Source: Fimbriosthenelais zetlandica (Eukaryota). Taken from it: 64,000 nt of DNA. The notes below the pieces were generated by a model, which was given only the letters and a program-made list of their open reading frames with translations, did no database searches and was not told where the DNA came from. The translations under genes were made by a program, and so were the position numbers. The stretch is taken from positions 25,110,001 to 25,174,000 of the forward strand of contig OZ365114.1 in the NCBI GenBank assembly GCA_977030845.1, given 5' to 3'. Positions 1 to 62,439 of this stretch are shown here, in pieces (within the stretch, counting starts at the first letter, position 1; every line of letters starts with the position of its first letter).

Positions 1-1143
1 TAAAGGTGACCGTGCCAGAATTAGAGGATGGGACACTTTCAAATATAAAATAGGTATACTTTAACTAGCACCAAGTTCAGGGATTACAGATTAATCATGG
101 TGTACTTTATAACATTATGAAAGTCTATGGTAATATTTTGATTAATACAAGTGTCAAAGACTGCTGTTTGTTGGATGCTATATTTTCATGTGATGTTGAT
201 TAAACATATATGTAAGCCCTCTCTTCGTGCTTTCTCCTACCTTGTGGTGCTGGGAAATCTGTCAAAATATAAGACTCAGTCTCAATGACTAACTGAAAAC
301 CACGTCATGGTACACTTATGTTAAACCTAAATGTTCTTGCAACACAAAAGAAACTTTAAATGACCTTAAATATTCTTTGGTTGCAATTAATTTGAACATG
401 AATGTATACCATGAACAATAAACAAAATAAATCACTATTAATATACAACAACCGGTATACTATGCCACTGGTTCTGGTTATATGCTTGTCATAATCATGG
501 CTTACATCAATAAGGTTGATGGTGCCACAATCACGTTGCTGAAGTTGGTAACAATCCTAATCTACACACATGGTAGGTCTATAGACAAGACCATATATGG
601 AGAGACACTCAGTAAATGTGCATTTTTCACAACATTATAACCAGTATAAGGTATCACTAACCAGAATCGTAGCAAATAGCATCTGCCCGGAAGATACCTA
701 TGGCAACATAATCATAAACATAATCTGACAATTGCCCTCACTAAATAAACTTAATCACTCTCCTCCCCTGCTCTTTAGGCTATAGTTTTCTATCGCTAAC
801 CTAATTCTACACCATTTTTCGGGCAATGAACCCATGTTTTCCGATGGTATATCCTGCATCTCTCTATGCTAGAAATCGTATTACTCTCAATTGGTAAAAC
901 AATTGAGAAAACAATCCACATGTTTTGGTACTTATTAGTGCTTAAAATACTTAAATATTAAAGTTCCTTTTCAATAAACCACATGAGATTATTCAATTTG
1001 ATTGAAAATCTCTTAATCTTTTTGTTGATAACATTTTTTGATTAGATTTCCAGGATGAGGGACGATGCGGGACTGGTGATGGGTCCCCGTTGCTATGGCA
1101 ACAGTTGCTATGTACTACTATAGCTACTAGAGTAATGGTGATG

Positions 1144-1386
1144 TCAGTCGTCGGAGGATGTGCTGTCACGATCACTGCTGCTCGTGTCGAAGATGCCACC
1201 TCCCCAGCCATGAAGGCCCGTCATTCGTTTTCTTGGCTTTGTGCGCCTTGTAGTGGTGATGATCTCTGGTTCTGGTTCCCCAGTGTCAGAGTCAGGATCA
1301 GGCGGTCTAGGTGGAGCTGTATGATTCTGTGGACTCTTACGTTGAGCCCCATTACCTGTCATAACATTCTCGTATGTTGGCAGCTC
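1144..1386 (-). CDS. Receptor probable terminal coding exon (ELPTYENVM...SSDD-stop)
   Basis: Acceptor tctttctgttttgtag|, phase 0; LPxY motif; acidic C-terminus. Two internal donor-like sites make the 3' end uncertain. Confidence 0.75.
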   Translation of the reverse strand, partial: ELPTYENVMTGNGAQRKSPQNHTAPPRPPDPDSDTGEPEPEIITTTRRTKPRKRMTGLHGWGGGIFDTSSSDRDSTSSDD

Positions 1387-4300
1387 CTACAAAACAGAAA
1401 GACTCCATGAGCTCATGAAAGTACCCAGAAATTCAGTGTATGGCTTCGCAAATGCCTGTTGTCTGGAAAGATCGGAGTCCGGCATATATCTAGTTCAATA
1501 TACTAAGCAAAGTGATAGCATATTTTCTGTTGTGTGGAACAAAATTTAGTCAAAATAATTTACCAAATACAAACAAATTTTTCATTTAATGCTCATCATG
1601 TAACTGCCAAAAATGATTAATAATGTTTAACGTTTAACAAATGATAATATCATTCCCATCTACAGTTGTTTAAGGGGCTTAACCTTTCTGGAGCTTATTA
1701 ATTAATATTTCTTTTTCTACAAAGCACTATATTTGAGCAATGTTTTAAATAGAAATAATGTTGCATGATAAAAAGCTACAAGTAGGGTAGTGAAGCTGGC
1801 AGAGGAACTTGGCCTATTCTGTAATACAGAAACTGTTGCCGTTCTGGACACATTATCGGTTCACATAATTTCCCTAACCCAAGGAAAGAATTTCATGAAT
1901 ACAAATTATCATTAAGGCCAAATGAGGGGGAAAGGAAATAAAAACTACATTATGTTTCAAAAGGGAAACTGAATAACTTTGTTTTGTAAACTCTAATGAT
2001 GCTGGTACCATGTGAAAATGCAGAAATTTTTCCTATTATACTGCACAGGCTCTTGGCTTGTGCGATTCCTTCCTAATATGGGACTTCCTGCTTAATAACA
2101 TGTCTCTCATTGAAAGGAACACAAATGCAGTGATAAAATGCAAGCAGAAAGAATGTAGGAGACGTTGATGAAGAATAATCAAGGTTGATCATCCAAGGTT
2201 GTGAATCAGCGAGGAATTATGGAAGCTTTTAACAGCGAAATTATGTGTAAAGTGCGAATACAGATTAGAGTAGTTATATCGCGCTAAAGAGGAAAAAAGT
2301 GAAAGTAATAGCTTCAATCTCAGCTATATGAATGTAATTAAACCATGCATATCTAGATATAATATGCCAATTAACTGCCCGATAATTCTCATTATTGAAC
2401 TTAACCATTGTAGCCTTAGGCCTATATTACACTGCAAAAACTAGTAGTTAACACGATTCATAACAGGGCCCATCCCCAAAGTACAATGACATCCCTTTTA
2501 GAATGGAAAATCTCATATCCAATATGTAGTAAAGAACTTTTTGGAGGCATGAAAAGAAGACATAATAGTTGGCTATAGTTCACCTGACTTCAGTTTTCTG
2601 CTACATGCATCATTCATTCACATCACCCTCAGACTTTGCTCATGATACATTCTACACCCTTTGATCACATGCTCACAGGCTACTCATAATCTTACAATAC
2701 CAGACCTTCCATAACGAACTCTTAATCACAAGAGTTTATTCTGATGCATGCAAAACAATGCATAAAAACCTAACATAGACTTCATATTGTAGACTTAAGT
2801 TCATTCCAGTAATAAGGTTATTAATGTCACCTTGCAATGGATGCTCTATATGAACTACATAGACGCTACATCATCTACTCTATGATAATGTTGCATTGTC
2901 AATGTTGCCGGAAGCTGTGATGTGTATTTACGATGACGTGGCAGTGATGGATGCTGTTTACATAGACAGAGATAAGAGGACATACACACAACAGACAAAC
3001 ACGGACACATATATATGGACAGATGGCATTAAGTGCGTGTATTTACTCTATAGCTTCTAAAGCTGCCGAAACCAGTCTTGGAGGGTTGGACGGCTAGGGA
3101 GAAGTTTGGGAGACTCTGGTGGTTCATCATCATCGAGTGGTGCTGTTAGGGGAAAATTGGTGTCGCAAAACACGACAAGGCCACAATGTTATTCAACATC
3201 TTCTAGTGCAACAAAAGATATATCTTAAATCACAAGAGATTCAATCTTTCAACTTAAAAGGAAGAACTAGTCTATAAATCATAGAAAAGGAATTACTTCA
3301 TTTGTATGGAATTATGATCAAAGAATTTAGTCAAATTATACCAGTCATCGGTCAAGAAACAAGTAATGTTTAACATAATGCCACGTAAATTAAAGGTAAA
3401 TTACACTTTGAAAATATAAAAATACCTATCTGATACAATACAAACTACTTCAACATATGTGCTCAAGGTCTTGATAAATTCATAAGACTTAAAAATTAGA
3501 TATTATTAGATTTTTTCAATGCATAATTTAAGGATGTATATTATAAAATATATTCAATTGCTTTGGACATATACTATGAAAGGACTCATGCTTTGGTATG
3601 TATAAATAATATAGGACTATATATAGGGATGAATATTGCAATAGGCTCTACGATAGTAAGAGGGTATTGACCAACTCAGGATTCATACATTTTAGGGAAT
3701 TAGGACGCAATAAAGTTCTAAATAAAACTAGGAGAAATTGCTGTCAGTGTCCATGTCCCAAAATGAGATAGAAAAGTCCGAGATAGAAAAATAATTGAGT
3801 TAAAAATAAATGTTAGTGTCACACATTGGTGCATGACCCTGTTTTTTTTTTACCTAATTTACCTAAGTCGAAAAGACAGTTTACAACCAAGTAATTGTAA
3901 GACTGTCATGTAGGACCACGATACACGTATAGGGAGACATGCTATCATCAAAATGCATCCAGGTTATGTGGTAATCAAGGATACATCGATTCACACTGAC
4001 ATGATTCAAGTGGGAAAATGTCAATGTAACAGCTCAAAGTTCTACGGGTTTAACTTTCCAATGCAGATCGCGATCACATGAGGATACATAAGGATTTTTG
4101 AAATGCCAGGTTTTCTAGGAAGAAGTAACTTTCTTATATATCCTTGCCCCTACCATCAAGATGAAACTGTTATTAAATTACCAGAGCTCTAAATAAGTTC
4201 AAGTGATGAAGCAAATGGTATAAGCTGGCTCTCTGATGGTAAGGGTAATAGGATAAATAAGCCCGAAATTCACAATAAACGGAGCAACCATCTGGTTTCA

Positions 4301-7300
4301 TACTTTGTTACTGGACCAGAGTATTTCACAAGAGAATGAGCGAAAATGCAATGATTACGCGTTCATGCCGGAAGCTGTTGGAGCGGCTGGGGCCTTTGTT
4401 AGTTTGGGGCACAGCTAACGTGACGTTAGGCAGACTGTGGTGATTATTCCTGATAGTACACTGCTGATGGTGCAAAATTAAAATAAAACAAAATATTGGT
4501 GGGCGAAAAATTTGTCATCAGTCATTCAGTAAGCAAAATTCCCAAAATTATTCAGCGGTAAAAAGCAGTGTGTTGACTATTCCGAGTCTAAAATCCCCAT
4601 TCTACCAGTAGCTGCTCGGTTAGTACCCTTCAACGGGCTTCTAAAATCTGCAGTTAGAGACCCCCGTCTGAGTTAGGTAGATGCAATCACTTGATTGTTT
4701 GGTCATGGTAGAACGTAAATTGAGACTGGTATGACTTCAAGCAATCTGCAGGCCCACTCACAACTTTGCGCCTTCAGTGCTTGTGGGAAAACAAACCCGT
4801 ACATTGCCCTCAGTTCAATCCTACCGGGTCTCAATTCACTAAAATATCTTTTACACCAGACTTGTCCGAAAATTCAAGGCACGGTTGACAAAATACCAAG
4901 ATAAGTCGGTGTTTTCTGGGACAAAACAGCAAAACAGGCCCCTGGTCAAACAGTACTTGTTGGATATTTTCCGGTCAACCATTGTTGTACCTTGGCGTAA
5001 TCAATCAGCTTTGTATACTGGCTTTTCACAAGACGTTTCACCAGAAGCTGATGTATAGTAATCCAAACTGAAATAAAATCTTTCAAAAGATAACAAAGAA
5101 GGACAAGCATCTTCAGAAACAAAGTACAACAGTTTCAGTGACTCAAAGACAAAAAAAAGTGCAAATTAATATTATTTTGATACAACTACAAATAATTTAA
5201 AAAAAGGTACATCACTGAAAAATAATAAGAGGAAATAACCAGAGTGATTAGATTTATCGTGTTTTGTGTAATGCTAGGTTCTTAGGATTATCACTCATTT
5301 AGTTTAAGGGTTGCACCTAATCCATGAAAGAATACATGTCAAGAAAGGTTCTTGCGATTGTTTCTCAATTGCTTAGCTTTTCAGTCACTGTGAAATTGGA
5401 CATCCGATTGCTGACAGTGATGAACTGGCCCTGCATGATACTGCCATGGTTGCTGGTGCTCTACATATTGGGTGAGCTCGGGCTTTCTTGGACTAAGTTG
5501 AACTAGAATACGAGTATTTTGTAAATGTCACATGTTTGGGTGCTTTGCTGTAGATATTTTTGATTGTATCTGAATTATTAGGTACATTATAGGCCTACCA
5601 TGCTGCTTAACATAACTCTTAATGCCTATAGCCTAAATATCTGGAGCAATCTCTGCAAAGATTAGGCCTATGTAACACACCGAGGCATGGAATTGAGAGT
5701 ATTTTCAGGAATTTCATCCTGCCTATAAATCATATTCCATTTAAATGAAGATCTTATCGAAACTTAAACACAAACTTTAAGGAATGTGTAACCTCAATTG
5801 GTGTAAAAAGCTATCCTAGTCTATGGAAGGCCATTCCAAAGCAAAATCTCTATAACATCCACTATCTATACCTTGACTGTTAGTAAACCCTTTTCATGGC
5901 CACTAAAATGGTTTAGCTTGTGATAAATAGTCTTAGATAGGTACTAACCCCTCCAGAATTGGCCTGCAGGCCCAGGTTGGGTGTAGCTTGGGGTGAGGGT
6001 GCAGGTGGGGCTGTCGGCACAGCAGCTTGCATGGCTTCATCATAAGATGGAGGGGGAGCAGTGGGCGTGAGGCCGCCTGTGTTGGCACCTGGTGGGGCCA
6101 GTCCTCCTGGTGTGGGTTGTGGAGAGGGATCTAGATGAGTCCTCTCATCAGCATGTGGCGGAATGAGGCGCTCATTACTTCGCCGGAGTGAAGGCGGGTT
6201 GGATGTGTATGATGGCGGGTCAGACATGTAGGTGCTGTAGTTGTTCAGCAGGTTGTCTGGCCCGTTTCCTGTAGGATGGAACAAGGCAGATTACATACAG
6301 GATCAAAGCAATAAAGCCACCATCAATGTGATCAGAAGTGACAGTTTCTACAAGCCTGGAGGAAACCTGGCTGTATGGCCAATTGCTTTCTTTGAGGGCT
6401 TACGTTTTTCTTTATCTGGTTGATGTGTAATAGGCAAGGCAAAATATTTCTACACTATGAAATTATATCTCCAATGTAGGAGATCAATTTCATTTTAGCA
6501 CAGTTGTTACCACTAAGATTATGAACATTGCAAGATATCGGTTGTAATACTGTGAAAATCATCTATGAATATCAAAGGCAAAAATTGTTGATTCATACAT
6601 CTACTTGGCCTCCTAGGCATAGAAAACAAAATTATTTCACCAAATGACGTACATGTACATGTATACATGTGCGTGCGGAAGGAGGTATGTACATGTATGT
6701 CAAAATATAGTGGACATAACCGAACAAAAAGATTGCTTGTTCATGCAACAAAATTGCTGTGCAATATATAGTATATATCTTCTGATTCTACGGCTAGACA
6801 CCTGGGAGGTTTGTGCCGAAGACCTACAACTTCAATAGCTAGATTTCGTTTGAACGCCACTCACTTAAAATATATCATCTAAAATCTTTCTTATTCTCTA
6901 GGGACTTTGGGGAAAAGCATGGTTTGCATCCACTGAAGCATCAACCAATGTCAAAATAAAGGCTAAGCATAAAGTCCCATGCTGATTTTGTTATGGCAGC
7001 GTTTCGTACCTTTCAACTGGATTTCAAAGATAATTTAGACAGAAATTTTGAACAAAGTGCTTTTTAAATTGCATATACTTTTCGTACGGAAATTTTGTTA
7101 ATCCCAACCAAGTAGAGGTCTATACCCAAATGCTGCCACATACAAAACATTACTGGATTAACAACATTGCCGAGCAAAGCAATAGGCTGACACCACTCAT
7201 CAAAGGAGGTATGCAGAGGGTGCAACTGCTGACATACATTGAATCCTGCCATCTGTGCATCCCAGCAAGAGCCAAACACAGGCACATAAAAGGCAAAGTG

Positions 7301-10300
7301 AAACAGGGTAGTGCCAGCCTTCAGCCAATGCGCATTGACCATGACCACTGCCAAATTTTGTAACTCAGACCATCAGATTGATATCCATATCCAAATAGAG
7401 CATCATACAAACATAAACAATTAGAAAAAGGCTTGAATCAAAAGAGAAGGGTATTCCTTGCATGAATAATACAATAAATTAAGCAAGGACCAAGATGTAT
7501 TTCCATCAGAACTATACATCTCATCATCAACTTACTTTCACAATTAAATATCAATTTACATGATTCATTTACATTGTTTGAAAAGTAGGGATTCTGAATT
7601 GTAAGGAAAAAGATTTCATTGATGAATATAGCTGACAGATTTGGTCATTAAAGCAGCATGCAGGGGGCAGCAGCTGACCTGCAGGGGTGGAGGGTGGTGG
7701 CATGTGGTTGCTGGTGTCACGGGGACTACGGGTACCTGACGTGCCGTAATGCGGCTGGTACGTCACGGCGCTCCGGCCATTTCCCGGTGATATACCGGCC
7801 GAGGCGGCGGGTACCGGCTGCATCCTTGTCCCAGTGTATGCGGACCCGTTCTGGGTGGCACCAGCTGGAAAAAAATGAAGCATAATTATAGTGCCAGTGG
7901 CATACTGATACTTCAATGAGTAATATTTATATTTCTCTATGTTATTAATATGCGGAGGAAATACATCCTCTTAAAATATCCACATTTTGTTATAATATGA
8001 GCAGTATGAAATTTATTGACCTTTTGTGGTAGAGAACTGAACTTATTTGTTACATAATTTGGTACTTTTTGGGCGTGCAGAGAGTAGCACAACAGTAAGT
8101 ACTAATGAAAAGCATGCAGGCAAATTAAGTAGTACAGGAAGTTGGGAACCTGAGGCAGGCCAAATTCAGTATTATAGGAATTGGGACCCTGGGTCAGGCA
8201 AGATTCAGTACATGTAGTAGGAATTGGGACATTGGGTCACGCAGGAGTTGGTAGCACAGGACTTTAGACCATGGGTCAGGCAGGATTAAAAAAAATAGTC
8301 CTCCTCTCTCATTTCTCTGTTGTTGAGCTCACACCAGCTTTTGGAGAAACCACTGCACATTGTAACACAACTTTTACCTGTGCTAAGATGCTGACCCCTA
8401 CTTTTCCTTTTCCGCCCATAATAGCATCCAGCTATGATGACTGAGAATGACAGGATAGCGAGAATGACAGGAGGGAAGATGACGACTGGGTTATTCCCAT
8501 TGGTGACAGCTGGAATGATTGGTAAAATAGGAATGAACGAGAAGAAGAGTGAGGACAGGAGCAAGTCTTATTTTAGTGGAGATATTGCCAAATGTATTCC
8601 TCTGCCAATGGACTGTTGTGCTGTGTAGATTGCAGTTGACCTCCGTGCCTTTGCTTTGAAAGTGGATATGAAGAAATAGGGAATCTGAAGACAAATTTTG
8701 GTTTAGACAAATGCTAACGAAAATGCAGTAATGCTAAAAGACGGATAAAGTCTGACCATAAGGTATCTGAAGACTTAGCAATAAATAAATCAAATGTGTC
8801 CATTTCAGAGGAGATGGCTTTAATTATGAGAAAGCTGGAATTGCATATTCTTCACACCTAATAGGATCAGACGGAATCAGTCACTGAATGACGTTCAATC
8901 AAAGTGCTTTTCATTATTTCAAAGTCATTCAGAATCACATGCTCGTTTCAGCCAATGTGCCTAGACTACAGGACAGGAAGAATGCCATACAATGCAGTGG
9001 AGGTAGAAGCAATGCATACTGAAATAACTTTGATTTGAATTAACTTTGATTGAATTTCAAAATACCGATGATAAGAATCTGAAGAAGAGTAGAAAGAGCA
9101 ATAATGAAAATGGGCATTTGGTAGCATATGGTTCCTGCGAAAATGTCCATTTGTCCTTTAAGAGATTCCTAAGATAGGTGTAACAATGAGGATAGGTCGC
9201 AAACTGTGAGCGTCTACTGGAACAAAGTTTGCCCAGTGCATGGGGATAGGAAATGATTGAGAGGCAATTGCCAGCCTCTTTTACCTGCGTTTGGTGGGTT
9301 ATTTGGGGGGTTATGGCAACAGATACGGCATACTATTGCCACCACGAAGAACGGTAGAACCACTAGGGCAAGGAGAGGCATGAGGTTTCTTGAATTCGTA
9401 TCTGCTGGAAAGAAGAATCATTTTTTGAAATCAGCATTGACATATTTGGCGAGAGAAGATGTTTATTGCTTAGTGTAAGATGCAGGTCAGCTTTCAGATG
9501 TATTTTGTTGATGGCATATTATGCTGAAAGAGTATGGTGAGGATTAGACATGAAGAGGAAATTATTACTTCCGAAGAATTCATGTGGCTACTGAGTGAAG
9601 GTTTCTGTTTTGCAAAATCTTGTTCATAGTAAAGCATTATTTTGAGCTTGTTTTAATTATATTTACTGATATAGGCAAGTCTCTTCAATATTACGAGCTA
9701 ATTAATATTATTTCGAAACATCGTTTAAAACTGACACTATCTGAATGTTAAGTCAGACATTGTGAATCTTTTGCAGGCAGAACTAAACTTACCACAATGT
9801 GTTTCATCACTCTGATCTACACAGTCATATGTCCCATCGCAAACATCCTGGGTATAAAGGCACACACAAAGGGCGTCACATCTAAAAGGCTTGTAGCTTG
9901 GACAAGGGTCTTCAGCTGTCATGGTGGGAAACAATTAAGCTTTATGGCAAACAGATTTAAAGAAATCTACATATATCCTAGGAGGCAGCGACGTTGTCAA
10001 AATATCAGAAATCATTCGCTCTCTGTTTGGAATTTGTATTAGACAAACTGAGTAATTCTTGGATATTCTTGTAATACTTACGGCAACGCTCGTATTTAAA
10101 TACGCACTGACTATTCTTACACCTTTTTTGGGTGTAAGGGCACTCCCCAGCTGGAAGTAAGGAAAATTAATTAAGCATTTGTCTACTTTAAACCAATGGT
10201 GTTTGAAAGGTTTCTAATGCATTATATATACCTCTGTAACATTGTATGGATCATAAAACATAGATTAAATGCACTGTTATTTTGGATTGGCTTAAAATTG

Positions 10301-13300
10301 TCAACACTTACGACAGGTGCCATAGTATCGACTGACGCATGTTCCATCATTACACCGTTTCTCAGTGGTTCCACATTCGTTCGCTAAGCAAAATGACAAG
10401 TACAGTTCACAATTAGACAAAGAAAGTGAAATACTATGTAATGTTATAACTTGTATGCATGTTATCTGTATACAACTGCAAATAACTAAGTCATAGCATC
10501 CAGAGAACGATAGTGAAATAAAGATGATACTCACGACACTGTTCTAAAAAATGTACACATTTTCCATTTTTACAAAGTCTCTCTGTCACAGCACATCGCT
10601 GTTCAGGTAGACCTGAAAGGAATGGTTAGAATAGATGAAAAAAGGTTGATGACACCAATATGGTCTTACTCTACAGACAATCGGCAGGAGCTGGTGAATG
10701 TTTAATCAGCAATTCTCATTACCAATGGTTAACTTACATGTAAAATTCACTTACCAACAGGGCAATCCCTTTCAAGTATGGAAACACAAGCTCCGTTGGG
10801 ACAGCTCTTTTCAAACATACCACATTCCCCAGCTGTAAAATACATTCATAAGATTAAGTAGATTCAAGATAGGTACTATGAAAACCAGTATGATTGACAA
10901 GGATTCCAGTGGATAATTTTACACGAGTTCAAAGTGAGACATGTGACTACTTACGGCAGCCCTCAGTGAGCTGAACACAGGAACTATCAGAACACTCTTT
11001 CAGAAAACACGTGCTCTTATGCGGTGTTTGAGTTGGAGAACTTGTTGTTGCTGAAAAAATATAGGTCACTTATAGGGATGCCTTCAAAAGTGTAATATGC
11101 CTTCAATATTCTTTTCTTTATCCTTTCACGCAGGAAGGGAACACCACACTTACTTTTACATAAGGCGTAATCCTCATCCGACCCATCAGGGCAGTTTGGA
11201 AGATTGTTGCAAATGTGTTCTCGAGGTATGCACCACTTCTTACCACTGTACTCCGTCCGACAGACAAACCCATTCAGTGTCTTCCCTTCATAGCTGATGA
11301 CACATGCTGGATATACCATATTTATATTATAAGAGAACACGATATTATAGTTATAAGCAAGGACAAGGTCCTAAGCAAGGACAAACATACATAAATCTGA
11401 CATATATCAAAGAAAGGACCCAGCAGGTATGTACCTTCAAATATTAGAAATGCGTTCATGAATTTTGTATTTTGAATGTAGTTCAACAATTTGTATGAAG
11501 TACTAAGTGTATCATACAATCCTATTCTTTGTCTTTTGTGTTAGTAGGATGATTGTGTGGCGCCACTTCTTGTAATCTCATCCCCATTTCACGCTAAGAA
11601 AAGCAATGTTGTCAAATGCCAACCTGTGACATTGTTAAAGGACGAGTAAGGTCAGAGCTCTCCTAATCACTCCACCTGTTATTCTCGGAATAATTATTCA
11701 AAACAATACATGAAAATCTTGTACTCTGGTTCCGTTATGAATAACATTACGGGAATACCTCTACTAACCTTATACCATGTAGATGGAGTAGGCTAGATAT
11801 AGAGTATTGACTAACAAATCTCTAACGAATCTAAATCTTTTATGATTATAATTATCTATGACTAATATAGCAGATTCACTTGTGAAGCCTTCCTTGTGAC
11901 GTCACAAGTTACAACGGTGTGATCAACAGGATGCCATTGAACGTCACGCGCCACCATGGCACCCTTGTTGTATAACTGGAGGGAGCCCACACAGCCAATC
12001 ATCACTAATGTGTCACAGGAAAAACCTTGCTACACTGACTCCTGTGAGGGAAAGCTGGCTGCCGCTTGCAAAAGCTCTGTCACTGCAGGCCAAGTAAGGG
12101 CTCGTTGCAACTTGCGACTGAGGCCAGCGAAAGTTTTTTTTCCTTTGACAGATGCAGTTATACAAGAGGGGATTGTATCAAACATATTTGATGTCCTAGC
12201 GATACCAAACTCAAATCACAACAATAAGTCGCAAGGAAGACACATGTATGCTGTGTATCAGCCATATTAGACCTAGAAAGTGCAAATAAAAGCTATGTAC
12301 CATTTGTATTCTTCGAGACGCGTGTATAGACTCCATAGACGAAGTTAAAGTGGCCTTCTTCAGTGGGCTTCCTCACACGTACATAAAAGCCCGTCCTTGA
12401 ACTGTATCCTTCTGGTGGCTGTCCAGCATTCTTCAGCTGGGTATGGGTGTCTGCTTGAAGGTTTTTGAAGTGCACAACTCTAGGACCATCAGATGAAGTA
12501 TCCGAGTGGAGTTCGGCACGACCTGTAAAACAAATGAGTTGTCAACTTGATGCTTACAGCATCCCACCCAGTCCAAAGGACTTCTTCCAGATGGAATTTT
12601 TTTTTTTTTTTGGGGGGGGGGAATTTCGCAAAATAAGGAAATGAGATCTACAGAGAAAACCAAATGAGGGGAAAAGGGATCTTGTCTAGATATATTAGCC
12701 TAAGTGAGATTTACTTACCATTTTCCAGGTCCATTGTAGTAATCCTGAAGTAGATGAACAGTTTATCGCTCTTCAATTTTGGTGGTTTTAACTGCCAGAC
12801 ACAATCATAACGGTACTGTATATGTTGCCATGGAAACCGGATAGTACTGAGTTTTACCTCCCCGCCATCCATAGGGTCGCCGATTTGGGGGCAGTCTACC
12901 AAAGGAAAATGTATGACTACAGATCATGAGCCCAAACTAGGACGGTCAAGTGGAATGAGCCAACAGCTCAACATGACTTGGGTGTTCTCTATTGCTATGG
13001 GAGGCAACATAAGAACTACACTGGACTCCAACAAACACAATATTATATTGATGATACGTTCTTTTAACTAAGCTACCTCTTATCTTGCATGGTTATGATC
13101 GCACAACATATATGCATATGTAACCTTCTCAAATCTCAGATTTGATGTGTCCTTCAAACTCACCTGTAAAAGGCTGGTCTATCTTCCAAGTCTCTGGACC
13201 TGGGGCTATGAAAAAGAAATCAATAGAGCTTGTTATCTAGATATTCAACCACATCAAGTATTGGCACAGCTGGCAAGGTCAGAAACCTCGGTGGTTGATA

Positions 13301-16300
13301 TGCTTGATCTGTAAAGGGGGTTTGGCTGGAGGTGGGGTTAGGACAGCACCTCAATACCAAGATCTAATCATGAGCTGATTTAAGTGTTGATGCATGAGGA
13401 TTTTGTTATTGACCTAGAAAAAGAATGGAAGCCCTAGTCATGATAGAAATTTTGTTGTGTGGAAATAGAAAGATTGTTTTAGTATGTCCAAAATATTCCA
13501 AACAAGTTGAAATACTGAACTGAATGTAAGTGTAGGTCATACCAAAGTACAGGGCCGTTGGAGAAAATGAATTTCGATTTAAGACGGGAAACTCTCATCA
13601 GAATCCATATGGAACATTGGCTATTAGTCTTCTTGTCCTCATCAAGGTAGGCTAATTGTTGAAAAAGAATAAAACAAACAGCATAACTTACTTTTGACGG
13701 TCCAGTAAGTAGCCTTAAATCCAACGTATTCCTTGCTTGTAATAACTCCTGGGCTAAACTTGAGGAAGACTTGACCGCCAGTTGAAGCGATGACCGGTCT
13801 AATCCAGGTACCCGAGTTTCCAATCGACGACACATAGGTTGGCTGGTCAGGGAAGGGACGTGCTGTTTCATTAGCTCCATCATGGATCTGCAATAGATCA
13901 CCTCTCGTTAACTCTAATTACGCTTAACAGTTTTTACGACAAATTAGTACATTGTGCAATTCTCAGACAAAAGAGACCGAAAGAGATCATGCCATGATGC
14001 TAACAGACCATCACTGCATGAAAGCGGGTTGTTAGAGTTGAAATTGCTTTTAAGCAATTGTTTTGGGCTTTAATTTCTTCAGTTTCTTTTTTTTTTGCTT
14101 TAGTCGATTCATTTAATCTCCATGGACTGCATGATGCGAAAGGGTCCCCAAAATCATTTCTTAGAATTCTTGTTAAAAATCAACAATTGGTTAATGAACA
14201 ACGTGTGTCATCTGAGTCATGTTTAAATCCTTCATGTTTAAATCCAGTAATGTTATACTGACCTGCAGAACACTTTTTGGCGGGAGGTCGAGGTCATCAA
14301 ATATTATCCTGATGAAGCCAGTTCCCGGCTGCCCTTCATATTCTATCAAATGGGTCATAGGCCAACAGCATCCGGGAAAGTTTGGAGACCTAATTATGCC
14401 GTTTTTGTTCATTTCCACTGCAGAAGAGGCTGAAAGGTCAAAGACCAAAGAGTGAGGACAATTTGTTTTCAATGGCTGTGAATTTGAAGGAGAAAACGAG
14501 CAATTTGCTCAGATGAAAAGCAACACCAAGAACTGCCATGCTCAGATGCTGGCATGTTGTGACTTCCATGCTCCAGATGAGTGATTATAACATTGACTGA
14601 GGCGAATGTCTAATTGTACCCCTGATTACAAGACCTAAACAAATTTGGAGTAATTAAATTTAACCTTTCCATTGATTAGCTATTTCTGTCACATTTAAAG
14701 TCTAGACATCTTAATCATCTGCTTCTAAATAAATCTGACCTCTGTTTTCTGAACAAACAGCTGATTCAAATCAGTGGTTTCTTTGATTGACCTACTAAAT
14801 GCATGAGCGCACAAGAGAAATAATTTAAGGGAGGAAACCACACAAGACCGGCAATGCCTACGAGTTGCAAGTGGTTTTCAGATCCCTGTATTCCCTTACT
14901 AAGGACGGTAATGTTAATCTGAGGGACAACCATCAACTTTAGTCTCACACTTCTAACTGTATTGCCTATTCTATATTTGTATAATGGTGTGTCCAGTGCT
15001 TCAGGTGGAATGACTTATTTCATGCTGAAAGTACTTTTCCCATGGGAATTATGCCTTTGGCATCCCAGGATAATGGGCTGATAAGGCTAGCCACTTCCTT
15101 ATGGATGAAATAATGATTTTCAAACCTGCGCAGAATGTAGGACAAGACATCTTGGGAAAATTGCACAAAGCTATCTGTTTTTATTGTTGGCTTCTAGCCA
15201 GTGACTCTAATTCTTCGGAAAATCAAATCATCGATCACCCATCCTTCTTAATTGGTAAATCTATTCCATTTACAAATCAGGCTTCATTTTATGCACTGGG
15301 ATGCTTTAGTAAGATGAGACTGGAGGCTTTGGAAAGGGAATATCTTTCATCCTGATCAAGCATGCAATCACGGACCGGGTGAAGGCCTTTCTTACTAGTG
15401 CAGCTTTAATTCTTCCCTGCGCCATTTCACGGTGCAATATGTTCTTTGCTGGTTCCAAAATGTCTTCAGATAAATCAATTTCAAACTAATATTACCAAAA
15501 GGCGTGTGGACTCCAGCTGCTGTAAATTGCACGTGTCATGGTGTATGAGTTATGGACATGGTCCTCATAGATAATTTTCCATGTTATAGATTTAATCAGA
15601 ATTTATAATTTAGTAAGGATGGTCATAGATTGGATCGAGGCCAAGCTGAATAAAAAATTAGGATAGCTTGTCAAATCAGTGGCAACCTTGATAGTATTGT
15701 TTCCAATTACTGAAAATGGTTGTCCTGAAAAGGGATTATCCATCTGGGTACCCCACACTAACTACAGGATTCTGTCAAAGCTCCCCCACTTTGGTTTGCC
15801 TTTAAAGGAAGATAATTACTTTATGATCACGCAATACATCCCATAATTAGTGAGATTCCATTTGGGAGGCGAATACTTCTTCTGAGCTGTCACGAACTGT
15901 TACTGAAAAAAGGGCTGCAAACTGTCATTCACATTTTGATTATGTAGTACAGAGAAATTGATAATTGGTTCAGTCGGTATATATATCCCAGTCCAATATT
16001 GACTTAATACTTCATCGTTTAATATTCAACCACCTATTCTCTTTTAATCAATAGGCCCCTAGTTCAAATTGAAGTAGATCTAAACCTTCCAGAGAGGGTT
16101 CAGGGTTACAATATGAAGCCGTCTTCGAAGATCAAGAAGGGGCAGCATCAACATAAAAAGTTGGTTAGTCCCACCTCTCCCTCTGTCAAGTGCCACCACA
16201 ACAATCCACACCCTTTCAAAAAAACTCCCCAGACAAATTTCTATTTCCAGGTTCCCCGCATTCTCTGCTGCAATCAATATTTTAACATGTTTATCGTTAA

Positions 16301-30698: not shown

Positions 30699-62439
<31,741 letters not shown>

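What the first reader, a model, noticed from the sequence alone, without database searches (positions are those of the whole stretch)
8378..9404. Two alternative transmembrane exons: a Dscam-like mutually exclusive membrane anchor
Between the last LDLa exon and the tail are two separate phase 1-1 exons (120 and 132 nt). Each encodes a full TM helix and each ends CAG|gtaaaag. Including both would flip the PPxY tail outside and place GRKRKSR extracellularly, against the positive-inside rule. Skipping both would give a secreted protein. Mutual exclusion is the simplest reading. The juxtamembrane codes differ sharply: A has CRICC (palmitoylation-type cluster) and B has GCYY plus a polybasic patch. 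Drosophila Dscam1 uses two alternative TM exons to target dendrites versus axons (established); a similar sorting switch here is inference. The 775-nt spacing rules out steric exclusion, so an RNA-structure or protein mechanism is expected.
Basis: partly seen in the sequence, partly recalled or inferred. Interest (0 to 1): 0.88.

Follow-up and report, generated by a model that had tools for sequence, protein, structure and literature searches.

The report
Two alternative membrane-anchor exons
A probable annelid (worm) receptor gene carries two neighbouring exons that each encode a complete membrane anchor; natural selection has kept both in three species, so the gene probably makes two receptor forms, but no RNA data could be found to prove they are used one at a time.

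Summary
On the minus strand, exon A (9404-9285, 120 nt) and exon B (8509-8378, 132 nt) lie between the last LDLa exon (9915-9793) and exon 12 (7864-7679). All are phase 1-1. A and B each encode a strong TM helix and both end CAG|gtaaaag.

A hydrophobic in-frame exon is not beyond chance here: two unconserved look-alikes sit in the same introns. Conservation separates A and B from them. Both exons, with their splice sites, lengths and order, are kept in two other species whose introns do not align. Against relative L001, A has dN/dS of about 0.08. B has no amino-acid change, and its synonymous rate is 4-10 times below that of neighbouring exons.

One-at-a-time use remains an inference from membrane topology. 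No RNA run was served, and joint inclusion would stay in frame. I found no conserved RNA pairing and no convincing A-B homology.

Verdict: both are real, selected coding exons (about 0.95). Mutually exclusive use is about 0.6. This would be a new member of a known kind, functionally like Drosophila Dscam1 exons 17.1/17.2. This scan has flagged alternative exon pairs in two other genes of the same genome.

The parts
9793..9915 (-). Exon 10: last LDLa module, 123 nt, phase 1-1, donor TGTG|gtaagt.
   Evidence: Pfam Ldl_recept_a E=3.2e-6. Sequence. Held in organism A DNA contigs over 9787-9919 with 22/133 differences; 6 of the 11 changed codons that were listed are synonymous.
9285..9404 (-). Exon A: 120 nt, phase 1-1. 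Encodes a short ecto linker, a TM helix (LMPLLALVVLPFFVVAIV) and the CRICC cysteine cluster followed by NPPNNPP.
   Evidence: KD 2.89. The ortholog at L001:1665-1784 has the same length and splice sites, tblastn E=2e-21, dS 1.40, dN 0.117. In organism A, IVCRICC is kept through 5 synonymous changes.
8510..9284 (-). Intron A-B, 775 nt, an ordinary U2-type GT-AG intron. It holds a 16-nt tandem repeat (9020-9056) and an unconserved TM-like pseudo-exon (9134-9045).
   Evidence: Not alignable to L001 apart from the exon flanks. It is 902 nt in L001. In organism A, 1171 nt lie between the aligned A and B blocks, on one contig.
8510..8547 (-). Pyrimidine-rich intron stretch just upstream of exon B, conserved between the window and L001.
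   Evidence: The blastn block 8547-8371 is 91% identical to L001. It is not evidently shared by organism A (loose-end letters).
8378..8509 (-). Exon B: 132 nt, phase 1-1. Encodes a short ecto linker, a TM helix (VVIFPPVILAILSFSVIIAG), then CYY and the polybasic GRKRKSR.
   Evidence: KD 2.70. The ortholog at L001:2687-2818 is 100% identical in protein, with 7 synonymous changes and dS 0.26. Organism A shows 7/143 differences.
7865..8377 (-). Intron B-12, 513 nt, holding a 39-nt tandem repeat (8117-8243) and an unconserved TM-like pseudo-exon (8149-8054).
7679..7864 (-). Exon 12: first common cytoplasmic exon, 186 nt, phase 1-1.
   Evidence: 95.6% nucleotide identity to L001, dS 0.13, dN 0.015.
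7630..7678 (-). Conserved intron stretch after the exon 12 donor, containing TGCATG at 7662-7657 (an Rbfox-type motif).
   Evidence: Conserved in L001 with a 1-nt deletion and stop codons, so it is non-coding. TGCATG is present at the same place in both species.
5949..6268 (-). Next cytoplasmic exon, carrying two PPSY motifs. It enters in phase 1, so A, B or exon 12 could each join it in frame.
   Evidence: The alignment to L001 shows 104 of 106 codons encoding the same residue, dS 1.01, dN 0.009.

Best explanation
The gene encodes a type I receptor with CUB and LDLa modules outside the cell and a PPxY-bearing tail inside. Exons A and B are two alternative membrane anchors.

A mature mRNA most likely carries one of them, either 10-A-12 or 10-B-12. 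This gives two receptors with the same ectodomain and tail but different TM helices and inner juxtamembrane segments. The A form has a conserved Cys-Arg-Ile-Cys-Cys cluster at the inner leaflet, a typical S-acylation site, and almost no basic residues. The B form has Cys-Tyr-Tyr and a +5 polybasic stop-transfer patch.

Shown here: both exons are real, in frame and under purifying selection in three species.

Inferred: one-at-a-time use. If B followed A, B's fully conserved polybasic patch and the PPxY tail would end up outside the cell. Selection on these features only makes sense if each helix is the sole anchor.

Also inferred: A is probably the default choice, because its silent-site divergence is that of an ordinary exon. 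B is probably the regulated choice. Its silent sites are strongly constrained, it contains a purine-rich GGAAAAGGAAAAG run, and a pyrimidine-rich tract upstream of it is conserved. This points to selection by trans-acting splicing factors rather than by competing RNA pairing. A role in membrane sorting or turnover is speculation by analogy with Dscam1.
For: Anatomy.

Conservation in relative L001, a Logan DNA contig:
- Exon A has the same 120 nt, ag/gt sites and E=2e-21. There are 18.5 synonymous against 9.5 nonsynonymous differences (dS 1.40, dN 0.117). The changes sit in the flanks, and the TM plus CRICC region has a single V>I.
- Exon B has 7 synonymous and 0 nonsynonymous differences (dS 0.26).
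- Baseline dS in neighbouring exons is 1.01 and 2.56, and the introns do not align.

Second relative, organism A (runs X1-X4, DNA contigs):
- A, B and exon 10 are all present with their splice-site flanks. A and B lie on one contig, with 1171 nt between the aligned blocks.
- B is 95% identical, against 83.5% for A and for exon 10.
- In A, 6 of the 8 changed codons that were listed are synonymous.

Topology: flank charges are +1 after A and +5 after B. The PPSY motifs are 100% conserved.

Precedent: Dscam1 exons 17.1/17.2 encode alternative TM and juxtamembrane segments with different localisation (PMC7685093).
Against: - No RNA evidence of any kind: no RNA run was listed, and no transcript-derived protein fragment was found.
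- A, B and exon 12 are all phase 1-1 and multiples of 3. Double inclusion or double skipping therefore stays in frame and would not be removed by nonsense-mediated decay.
- The A donor and the B acceptor both look strong, and nothing in the sequence forbids an A-B junction.
- No conserved complementary intron elements were found.
- A and B are not demonstrably homologous, unlike most known exclusive pairs.
- The asymmetry in silent-site constraint would also fit A as a constitutive exon with B as a cassette.
Confidence: 0.6

Rival explanations
1. Module choice rather than a simple pair: exon A joins straight to the PPSY exon (6268), skipping both B and exon 12, while B is used together with exon 12. 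There is still only one anchor per protein, but the isoforms also differ by the 62 residues of exon 12.
For: All four exons and the 6268 acceptor are phase 1, so this is in frame. B and exon 12 share unusually low dS (0.26 and 0.13) and conserved flanking intron, unlike A (1.40). A conserved TGCATG follows exon 12.
Against: No RNA data. Low dS in exon 12 may have other causes.
Confidence: 0.15
2. A is constitutive and B is a cassette exon. The isoforms would be A alone (one TM, tail inside) and A+B (two TMs, tail outside or a frustrated topology).
For: A evolves at silent sites like the constitutive exons, whereas B shows the alternative-exon signature. Joint inclusion is in frame.
Against: It would put the conserved +5 patch and the conserved PPSY and YENV motifs on the wrong side of the membrane. 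B's linker and helix look like a stand-alone type I anchor.
Confidence: 0.1
3. Both exons are constitutive and the protein has a two-helix hairpin.
For: Both are conserved, both have strong splice sites, and their order is conserved.
Against: The same topology conflict applies. The 23-residue loop would carry one Arg, while the segment that would be extracellular carries five basic residues. The cytosolic sorting motifs would be lumenal.
Confidence: 0.07
4. One of the two is a chance or decaying pseudo-exon.
For: Hydrophobic phase 1-1 open frames do arise by chance in these AT-rich introns: two more were found.
Against: The chance candidates are not conserved. A and B keep frame, length, splice sites and a dN/dS of 0.08 or less across a silent-site divergence of about 1 or more.
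Confidence: 0.03

Closest known systems
Drosophila Dscam1 exons 17.1/17.2 (TM1/TM2)
   Same: Two adjacent exons of a type I receptor each encode the TM helix plus juxtamembrane segment. There they are spliced in a mutually exclusive way, and the isoforms differ in subcellular localisation (PMC7685093).
   Different: It is an unrelated protein family (Ig/FnIII ectodomain against CUB/LDLa here) in a different phylum. Exclusivity and localisation are not shown here. The intron between the pair is 252 bp in Dscam1 against 775-1171 nt here.
Classical mutually exclusive exon pairs (for example FGFR2 IIIb/IIIc and PKM 9/10; from general knowledge)
   Same: Adjacent alternative exons with the same phase and similar length, with signs of trans-factor regulation (pyrimidine tract, purine-rich exon run, a (U)GCAUG nearby).
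   Different: In those pairs, double inclusion or double skipping shifts the frame and is removed by NMD, and the two exons are clear homologs. Here everything stays in frame and homology is not demonstrable.
Vertebrate LRP3/LRP10/LRP12-type receptors (CUB + LDLa, single TM, proline-rich tail; from general knowledge)
   Same: CUB and LDLa modules, one membrane anchor, and a cytoplasmic tail with short sorting motifs.
   Different: Orthology was not tested. No LDLa was seen between the two CUB regions. Five small 4-Cys exons precede the last LDLa. No annotated full-length ortholog was retrievable.

Membership tests
Mutually exclusive exon pair | Adjacent exons in the same gene, each with its own functional splice sites | tested here: met
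   A and B are separated by one GT-AG intron. The splice sites are conserved in L001 and organism A.
Mutually exclusive exon pair | Same reading phase and similar length | tested here: met
   Both are phase 1-1. Lengths are 120 and 132 nt, identical in L001.
Mutually exclusive exon pair | Sequence homology between the two exons (tandem duplication) | tested here: inconclusive
   BLOSUM62 semi-global score 22: p = 0.02 against a full shuffle, p = 0.16 when ecto, TM and cyto segments are shuffled separately. About 50% DNA identity. The shared xTNxxN start is not kept in the L001 exon A.
Mutually exclusive exon pair | Transcripts contain exactly one of the two exons | not testable with these tools
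   No RNA run was listed. The runs found are DNA contigs. No transcript-derived proteins were found.
Mutually exclusive exon pair | A mechanism that enforces exclusion (steric, U2/U12 incompatibility, NMD, competing RNA pairing) | tested here: not met
   The intron is 775 nt or more, so not steric. Both donors are gtaaaag, so U2-type. Both lengths are divisible by 3, so no NMD. No conserved complementary 8-mers exist between the introns of the two species. The 12-nt complement 9481-9492 / 7672-7683 is absent from L001.
Dscam1 exon-17-type alternative TM anchor | Each alternative exon encodes the full TM helix plus juxtamembrane segment of a type I receptor | tested here: met
   KD means 2.89 and 2.70, each with a short ecto linker and a distinct inner flank.
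Dscam1 exon-17-type alternative TM anchor | Homology to Dscam (Ig/FnIII ectodomain) | tested here: not met
   The ectodomain exons are LDLa (Pfam) and CUB (profile hit to cubilin, E=8.7e-4). This is an analogue, not a member.
CUB-LDLa type I receptors (LRP3/10/12-like) | CUB and LDLa modules followed by one TM helix and a cytoplasmic tail | tested here: met
CUB-LDLa type I receptors (LRP3/10/12-like) | Orthology to a named vertebrate member | not tested
   The representative search returned only exon-sized genomic ORFs and two bacterial proteins. A full-length spliced query could not be referenced.

The most novel reading that the evidence does not exclude
B is a cassette placed behind a constitutive A. 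One gene would then make a one-helix receptor with its PPxY tail in the cytosol and a two-helix form whose tail is flipped to the outside. That would be a splicing-controlled topology switch in a single-pass receptor.
Probability: 0.07. Interest if true: 0.85.

Novelty: new member of a known kind. Interest (0 to 1): 0.5.

Why it matters
Swapping only the membrane anchor of a single-pass receptor by alternative splicing is well documented for very few genes; Dscam1 is the textbook case. A second, unrelated example in a lophotrochozoan CUB/LDLa receptor would show that the strategy evolved more than once. One anchor here has a conserved acylation-type cysteine cluster and the other a conserved polybasic patch.

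The case would also pose a clean mechanistic question. This pair lacks every known safeguard for exclusion: no frameshift or NMD, no steric limit, no U12 intron, and no detectable docking/selector pairing.

The near-absence of silent changes in exon B across three species points to a dense RNA-level code that minigenes could dissect.

Tried and rejected
- **RNA evidence.** The kind=rna search listed nothing. The kind=any search gave four runs of a relative that turned out to be DNA contigs.
- **Transcript-derived protein fragments.** Searches with the exon B ORF, exon 12 and the exon A ORF gave only genomic ORFs of one relative, or nothing.
- **Annotated orthologs.** The exhaustive representative search with a CUB exon gave exon-sized genomic ORFs plus two bacterial proteins.
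- **More distant relatives.** Their contigs were too short or did not reach the TM exons.
- **Docking/selector pairing.** No complementary 8-mers are shared by the introns of the two species. A perfect 12-nt complement between 9481-9492 and the exon 12 donor is not conserved.
- **Hairpin around exon B.** A fold pairing the pyrimidine tract with the purine-rich end of exon B has z = -2.2 in the window but +0.15 in L001. Rejected.
- **Other checks.** There are no Rfam families in 1-16000. Single CUB exons found nothing informative in PDB or Pfam; only the profile did.
- **Third TM exon.** Candidates at 9134-9045 and 8149-8054 were rejected as unconserved.

Full report
**What is there**

The gene runs on the minus strand. 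Reading it gives this order:
- Exon 10 at 9915-9793 (123 nt), an LDLa module by Pfam (E=3.2e-6).
- Exon A at 9404-9285 (120 nt).
- Exon B at 8509-8378 (132 nt).
- Exon 12 at 7864-7679 (186 nt).
- A PPSY-bearing exon at 6268-5949.

All of these enter in phase 1, and exons 10, A, B and 12 also leave in phase 1. A and B both follow ttccag and both end CAG|gtaaaag. Each has a strongly hydrophobic 19-residue window, with Kyte-Doolittle means of 2.89 and 2.70. A is followed by CRICCHNPPNNPP, and B by GCYYGRKRKSR. The intron between them is 775 nt. The only correction concerns exon 12. Its in-frame conservation runs on to 7679, so it is probably 186 nt rather than 129 nt.

**Is it more than chance?**

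Taken alone, it is not. A scan of 10400-6300 for AG...GT, phase 1-1, open frames with a hydrophobic stretch finds two further candidates, at 9134-9045 and 8149-8054. AT-rich introns translate into hydrophobic peptides easily. Conservation is what separates A and B from these, and the two extra candidates have none.

**Comparative evidence, relative 1**

A protein search with the exon B open frame found one 155-aa ORF from Logan assemblies. Its contig, L001 (12,973 nt, three near-identical copies), is genomic DNA of a related species. Only exon blocks align to the window, at 75-93% identity, and the introns do not align.
- Exon B lies at L001:2687-2818 with the same 132 nt and the same splice sites. 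It has 7 synonymous and 0 nonsynonymous differences (dS 0.26).
- Exon A lies at L001:1665-1784 with the same 120 nt, an ag acceptor and a gtaaac donor. tblastn gives E=2e-21. There are 18.5 synonymous against 9.5 nonsynonymous differences (dS 1.40, dN 0.117, ratio about 0.08).
- The amino-acid changes in A lie in the flanks. The helix and CRICC show a single V>I.
- For scale, the neighbouring exons have dS 1.01 (6268-5949) and 2.56 (last coding exon), with dN about 0.01. Exon 12 has dS 0.13.
- The A-B intron is 902 nt in L001.

**Comparative evidence, relative 2**

The only public runs found, X1-X4 ("organism A"), hold Logan DNA contigs. At 80% likeness or better they cover exon B (8373-8515, 7/143 differences), exon A (9279-9411, 22/133) and exon 10 (9787-9919, 22/133). 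Each match ends 4-7 nt beyond the splice sites. In three of the runs a single contig carries both A and B, with 1171 nt between the aligned blocks. Among the differences that were listed:
- Exon A has 6 synonymous and 2 conservative codon changes. I-V-C-R-I-C-C is preserved through five silent changes.
- Exon B has one silent change and one V>I.
- That V>I and the flanking intron letters show that organism A is a different species from L001.

Both exons, their order, lengths and splice sites are thus maintained in three species. The probability that either is a pseudo-exon is very small.

**An asymmetry between A and B**

In both comparisons exon B is far more conserved at the nucleotide level than exon A or the constitutive exon 10: 95% against 83.5% in organism A, and dS 0.26 against 1.40 in L001. 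About 38 nt of pyrimidine-rich intron upstream of B are conserved between the window and L001. Exon 12 shares the low dS. It is followed by about 50 nt of conserved non-coding intron that holds TGCATG at the same position in both species. From general knowledge, reduced silent-site change and conserved flanking intron are typical of regulated alternative exons, and (U)GCAUG is the Rbfox binding motif. I therefore read B, and perhaps exon 12, as the regulated exon and A as the default.

**Mutually exclusive or not?**

This could not be tested directly.
- No RNA run was listed.
- Searches for transcript-derived protein fragments found only genomic ORFs or nothing.
- The exhaustive representative search returned no annotated full-length ortholog.

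The case for one anchor per protein is topological. After the translocated ectodomain, A would stop transfer. B would then have to insert with its N-terminus in the cytosol and its C-terminus outside. That would push its fully conserved +5 patch and the conserved PPSY and YENV motifs across the membrane, against the positive-inside rule and against the cytosolic role of PPxY motifs (both from established knowledge). Selection on these features makes sense only if each helix is the sole anchor.

The points against certainty:
- Every combination of A, B and exon 12 stays in frame, so there is no NMD filter.
- The intron is long, so there is no steric block, and both donors are U2-type.
- I found no conserved complementary intron elements.
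- A perfect 12-nt complement between 9481-9492 and the exon 12 donor is absent from L001.
- A fold pairing B's pyrimidine tract with its purine-rich end is not reproduced in L001.

My estimates are about 0.6 for a simple A-or-B choice and 0.15 for a module variant (A alone against B plus exon 12), which also gives one anchor per protein. I put A constitutive with B as a cassette at 0.1, both constitutive at 0.07, and a dead exon at 0.03.

**Origin of the pair**

A and B are not demonstrably homologous. The protein score has p = 0.02 against a plain shuffle but p = 0.16 when the ecto, TM and cyto segments are shuffled separately. DNA identity is about 50%. The shared xTNxxN start in the window is not kept in the L001 exon A. 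Either the duplication is old or the second anchor arose independently.

**The gene**

Upstream exons include a CUB half-domain. A profile built from it and 15 exon-sized relatives hits cubilin CUB domains at E=8.7e-4. There are also two Pfam LDLa modules and five small 4-Cys exons. The tail carries two PPSY motifs and YENV, all conserved. The architecture resembles vertebrate LRP3/10/12-type receptors, but that comparison rests on memory and orthology was not tested. Earlier notes of this scan call the genome probably annelid; I did not verify that.

**Comparison with what is known**

The closest functional precedent is Drosophila Dscam1. Its exons 17.1 and 17.2 encode alternative TM and juxtamembrane segments, are spliced exclusively, and give isoforms with different dendrite and axon localisation (PMC7685093). 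The present case would work like that pair, but it is not a member of that family, because the ectodomain is CUB/LDLa. Unlike most classical exclusive pairs, it lacks a frameshift safeguard and clear homology between the exons. A literature search for other single-pass receptors with exclusive TM exons gave nothing relevant.

**Verdict**

Both exons are real and selected. Alternative-anchor use is probable but unproven. I class it as a new member of a known kind, of moderate interest, with a clear and cheap decisive test: junction counts between exons 10 and 12.

Noticed in passing
window 10082-11050 (minus strand): Five tandem mini exons at 11050-10955, 10832-10755, 10612-10535, 10383-10312 and 10150-10082 (96, 78, 78, 72 and 69 nt). 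All are phase 1-1. Each encodes a C-x6-C-x5-C-x7-C motif and ends C|gtaagt or C|gtgagt. They could form a stalk of repeated half-LDLa-like modules or a cluster of alternative exons.
   Followed up: partly
window 7630-7678 and 7679-7864 (minus strand): Exon 12 has very low silent-site divergence (dS 0.13). It is followed by about 50 nt of conserved non-coding intron with TGCATG (7662-7657) at the same place in L001. This suggests Rbfox-type regulation of this exon or its neighbours.
   Followed up: partly
window 3057-3142 and about 2865-3204 (minus strand): An exon ends in an in-frame stop (TAG 3059-3057, peptide ...LQDWFRQL*). It is almost 100% identical to L001, including about 70 nt past the stop, which suggests an alternative 3'-terminal exon. 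The other C-terminus lies at 1386-1144 (ELPTYENV...SSDD*) and has normal silent divergence.
   Followed up: partly
window 4359-4463 (minus strand): A cytoplasmic exon (…NNHHSLPNVTLAVPQTNKGPSRSNSFRHER) is nearly identical in nucleotides to L001, another exon with an alternative-exon-like signature. It overlaps the separate first-stage note on duplicated tail exons.
   Followed up: no
window 42901-43467 and 30702-31070 (minus strand): The upstream neighbour is a paired-like homeobox gene, with Homeodomain E=1e-15 and OAR motif E=2.3e-9. From memory, the homeodomain sequence looks Shox-like.
   Followed up: partly
window 8117-8243: A 39-nt tandem repeat of 3.2 copies lies in the intron between exon B and exon 12. 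It is not conserved in L001.
   Followed up: no
window 9401-9410 (minus strand): The exon A acceptor is a tandem cagcag (NAGNAG), which could add or drop one codon. It is not present in L001, which has tag|CC.
   Followed up: no
window 9481-9492 and 7672-7683: A perfect 12-nt complement lies between a site 77 nt upstream of exon A and the exon 12 donor. The upstream arm is absent from L001, so it is probably chance.
   Followed up: yes
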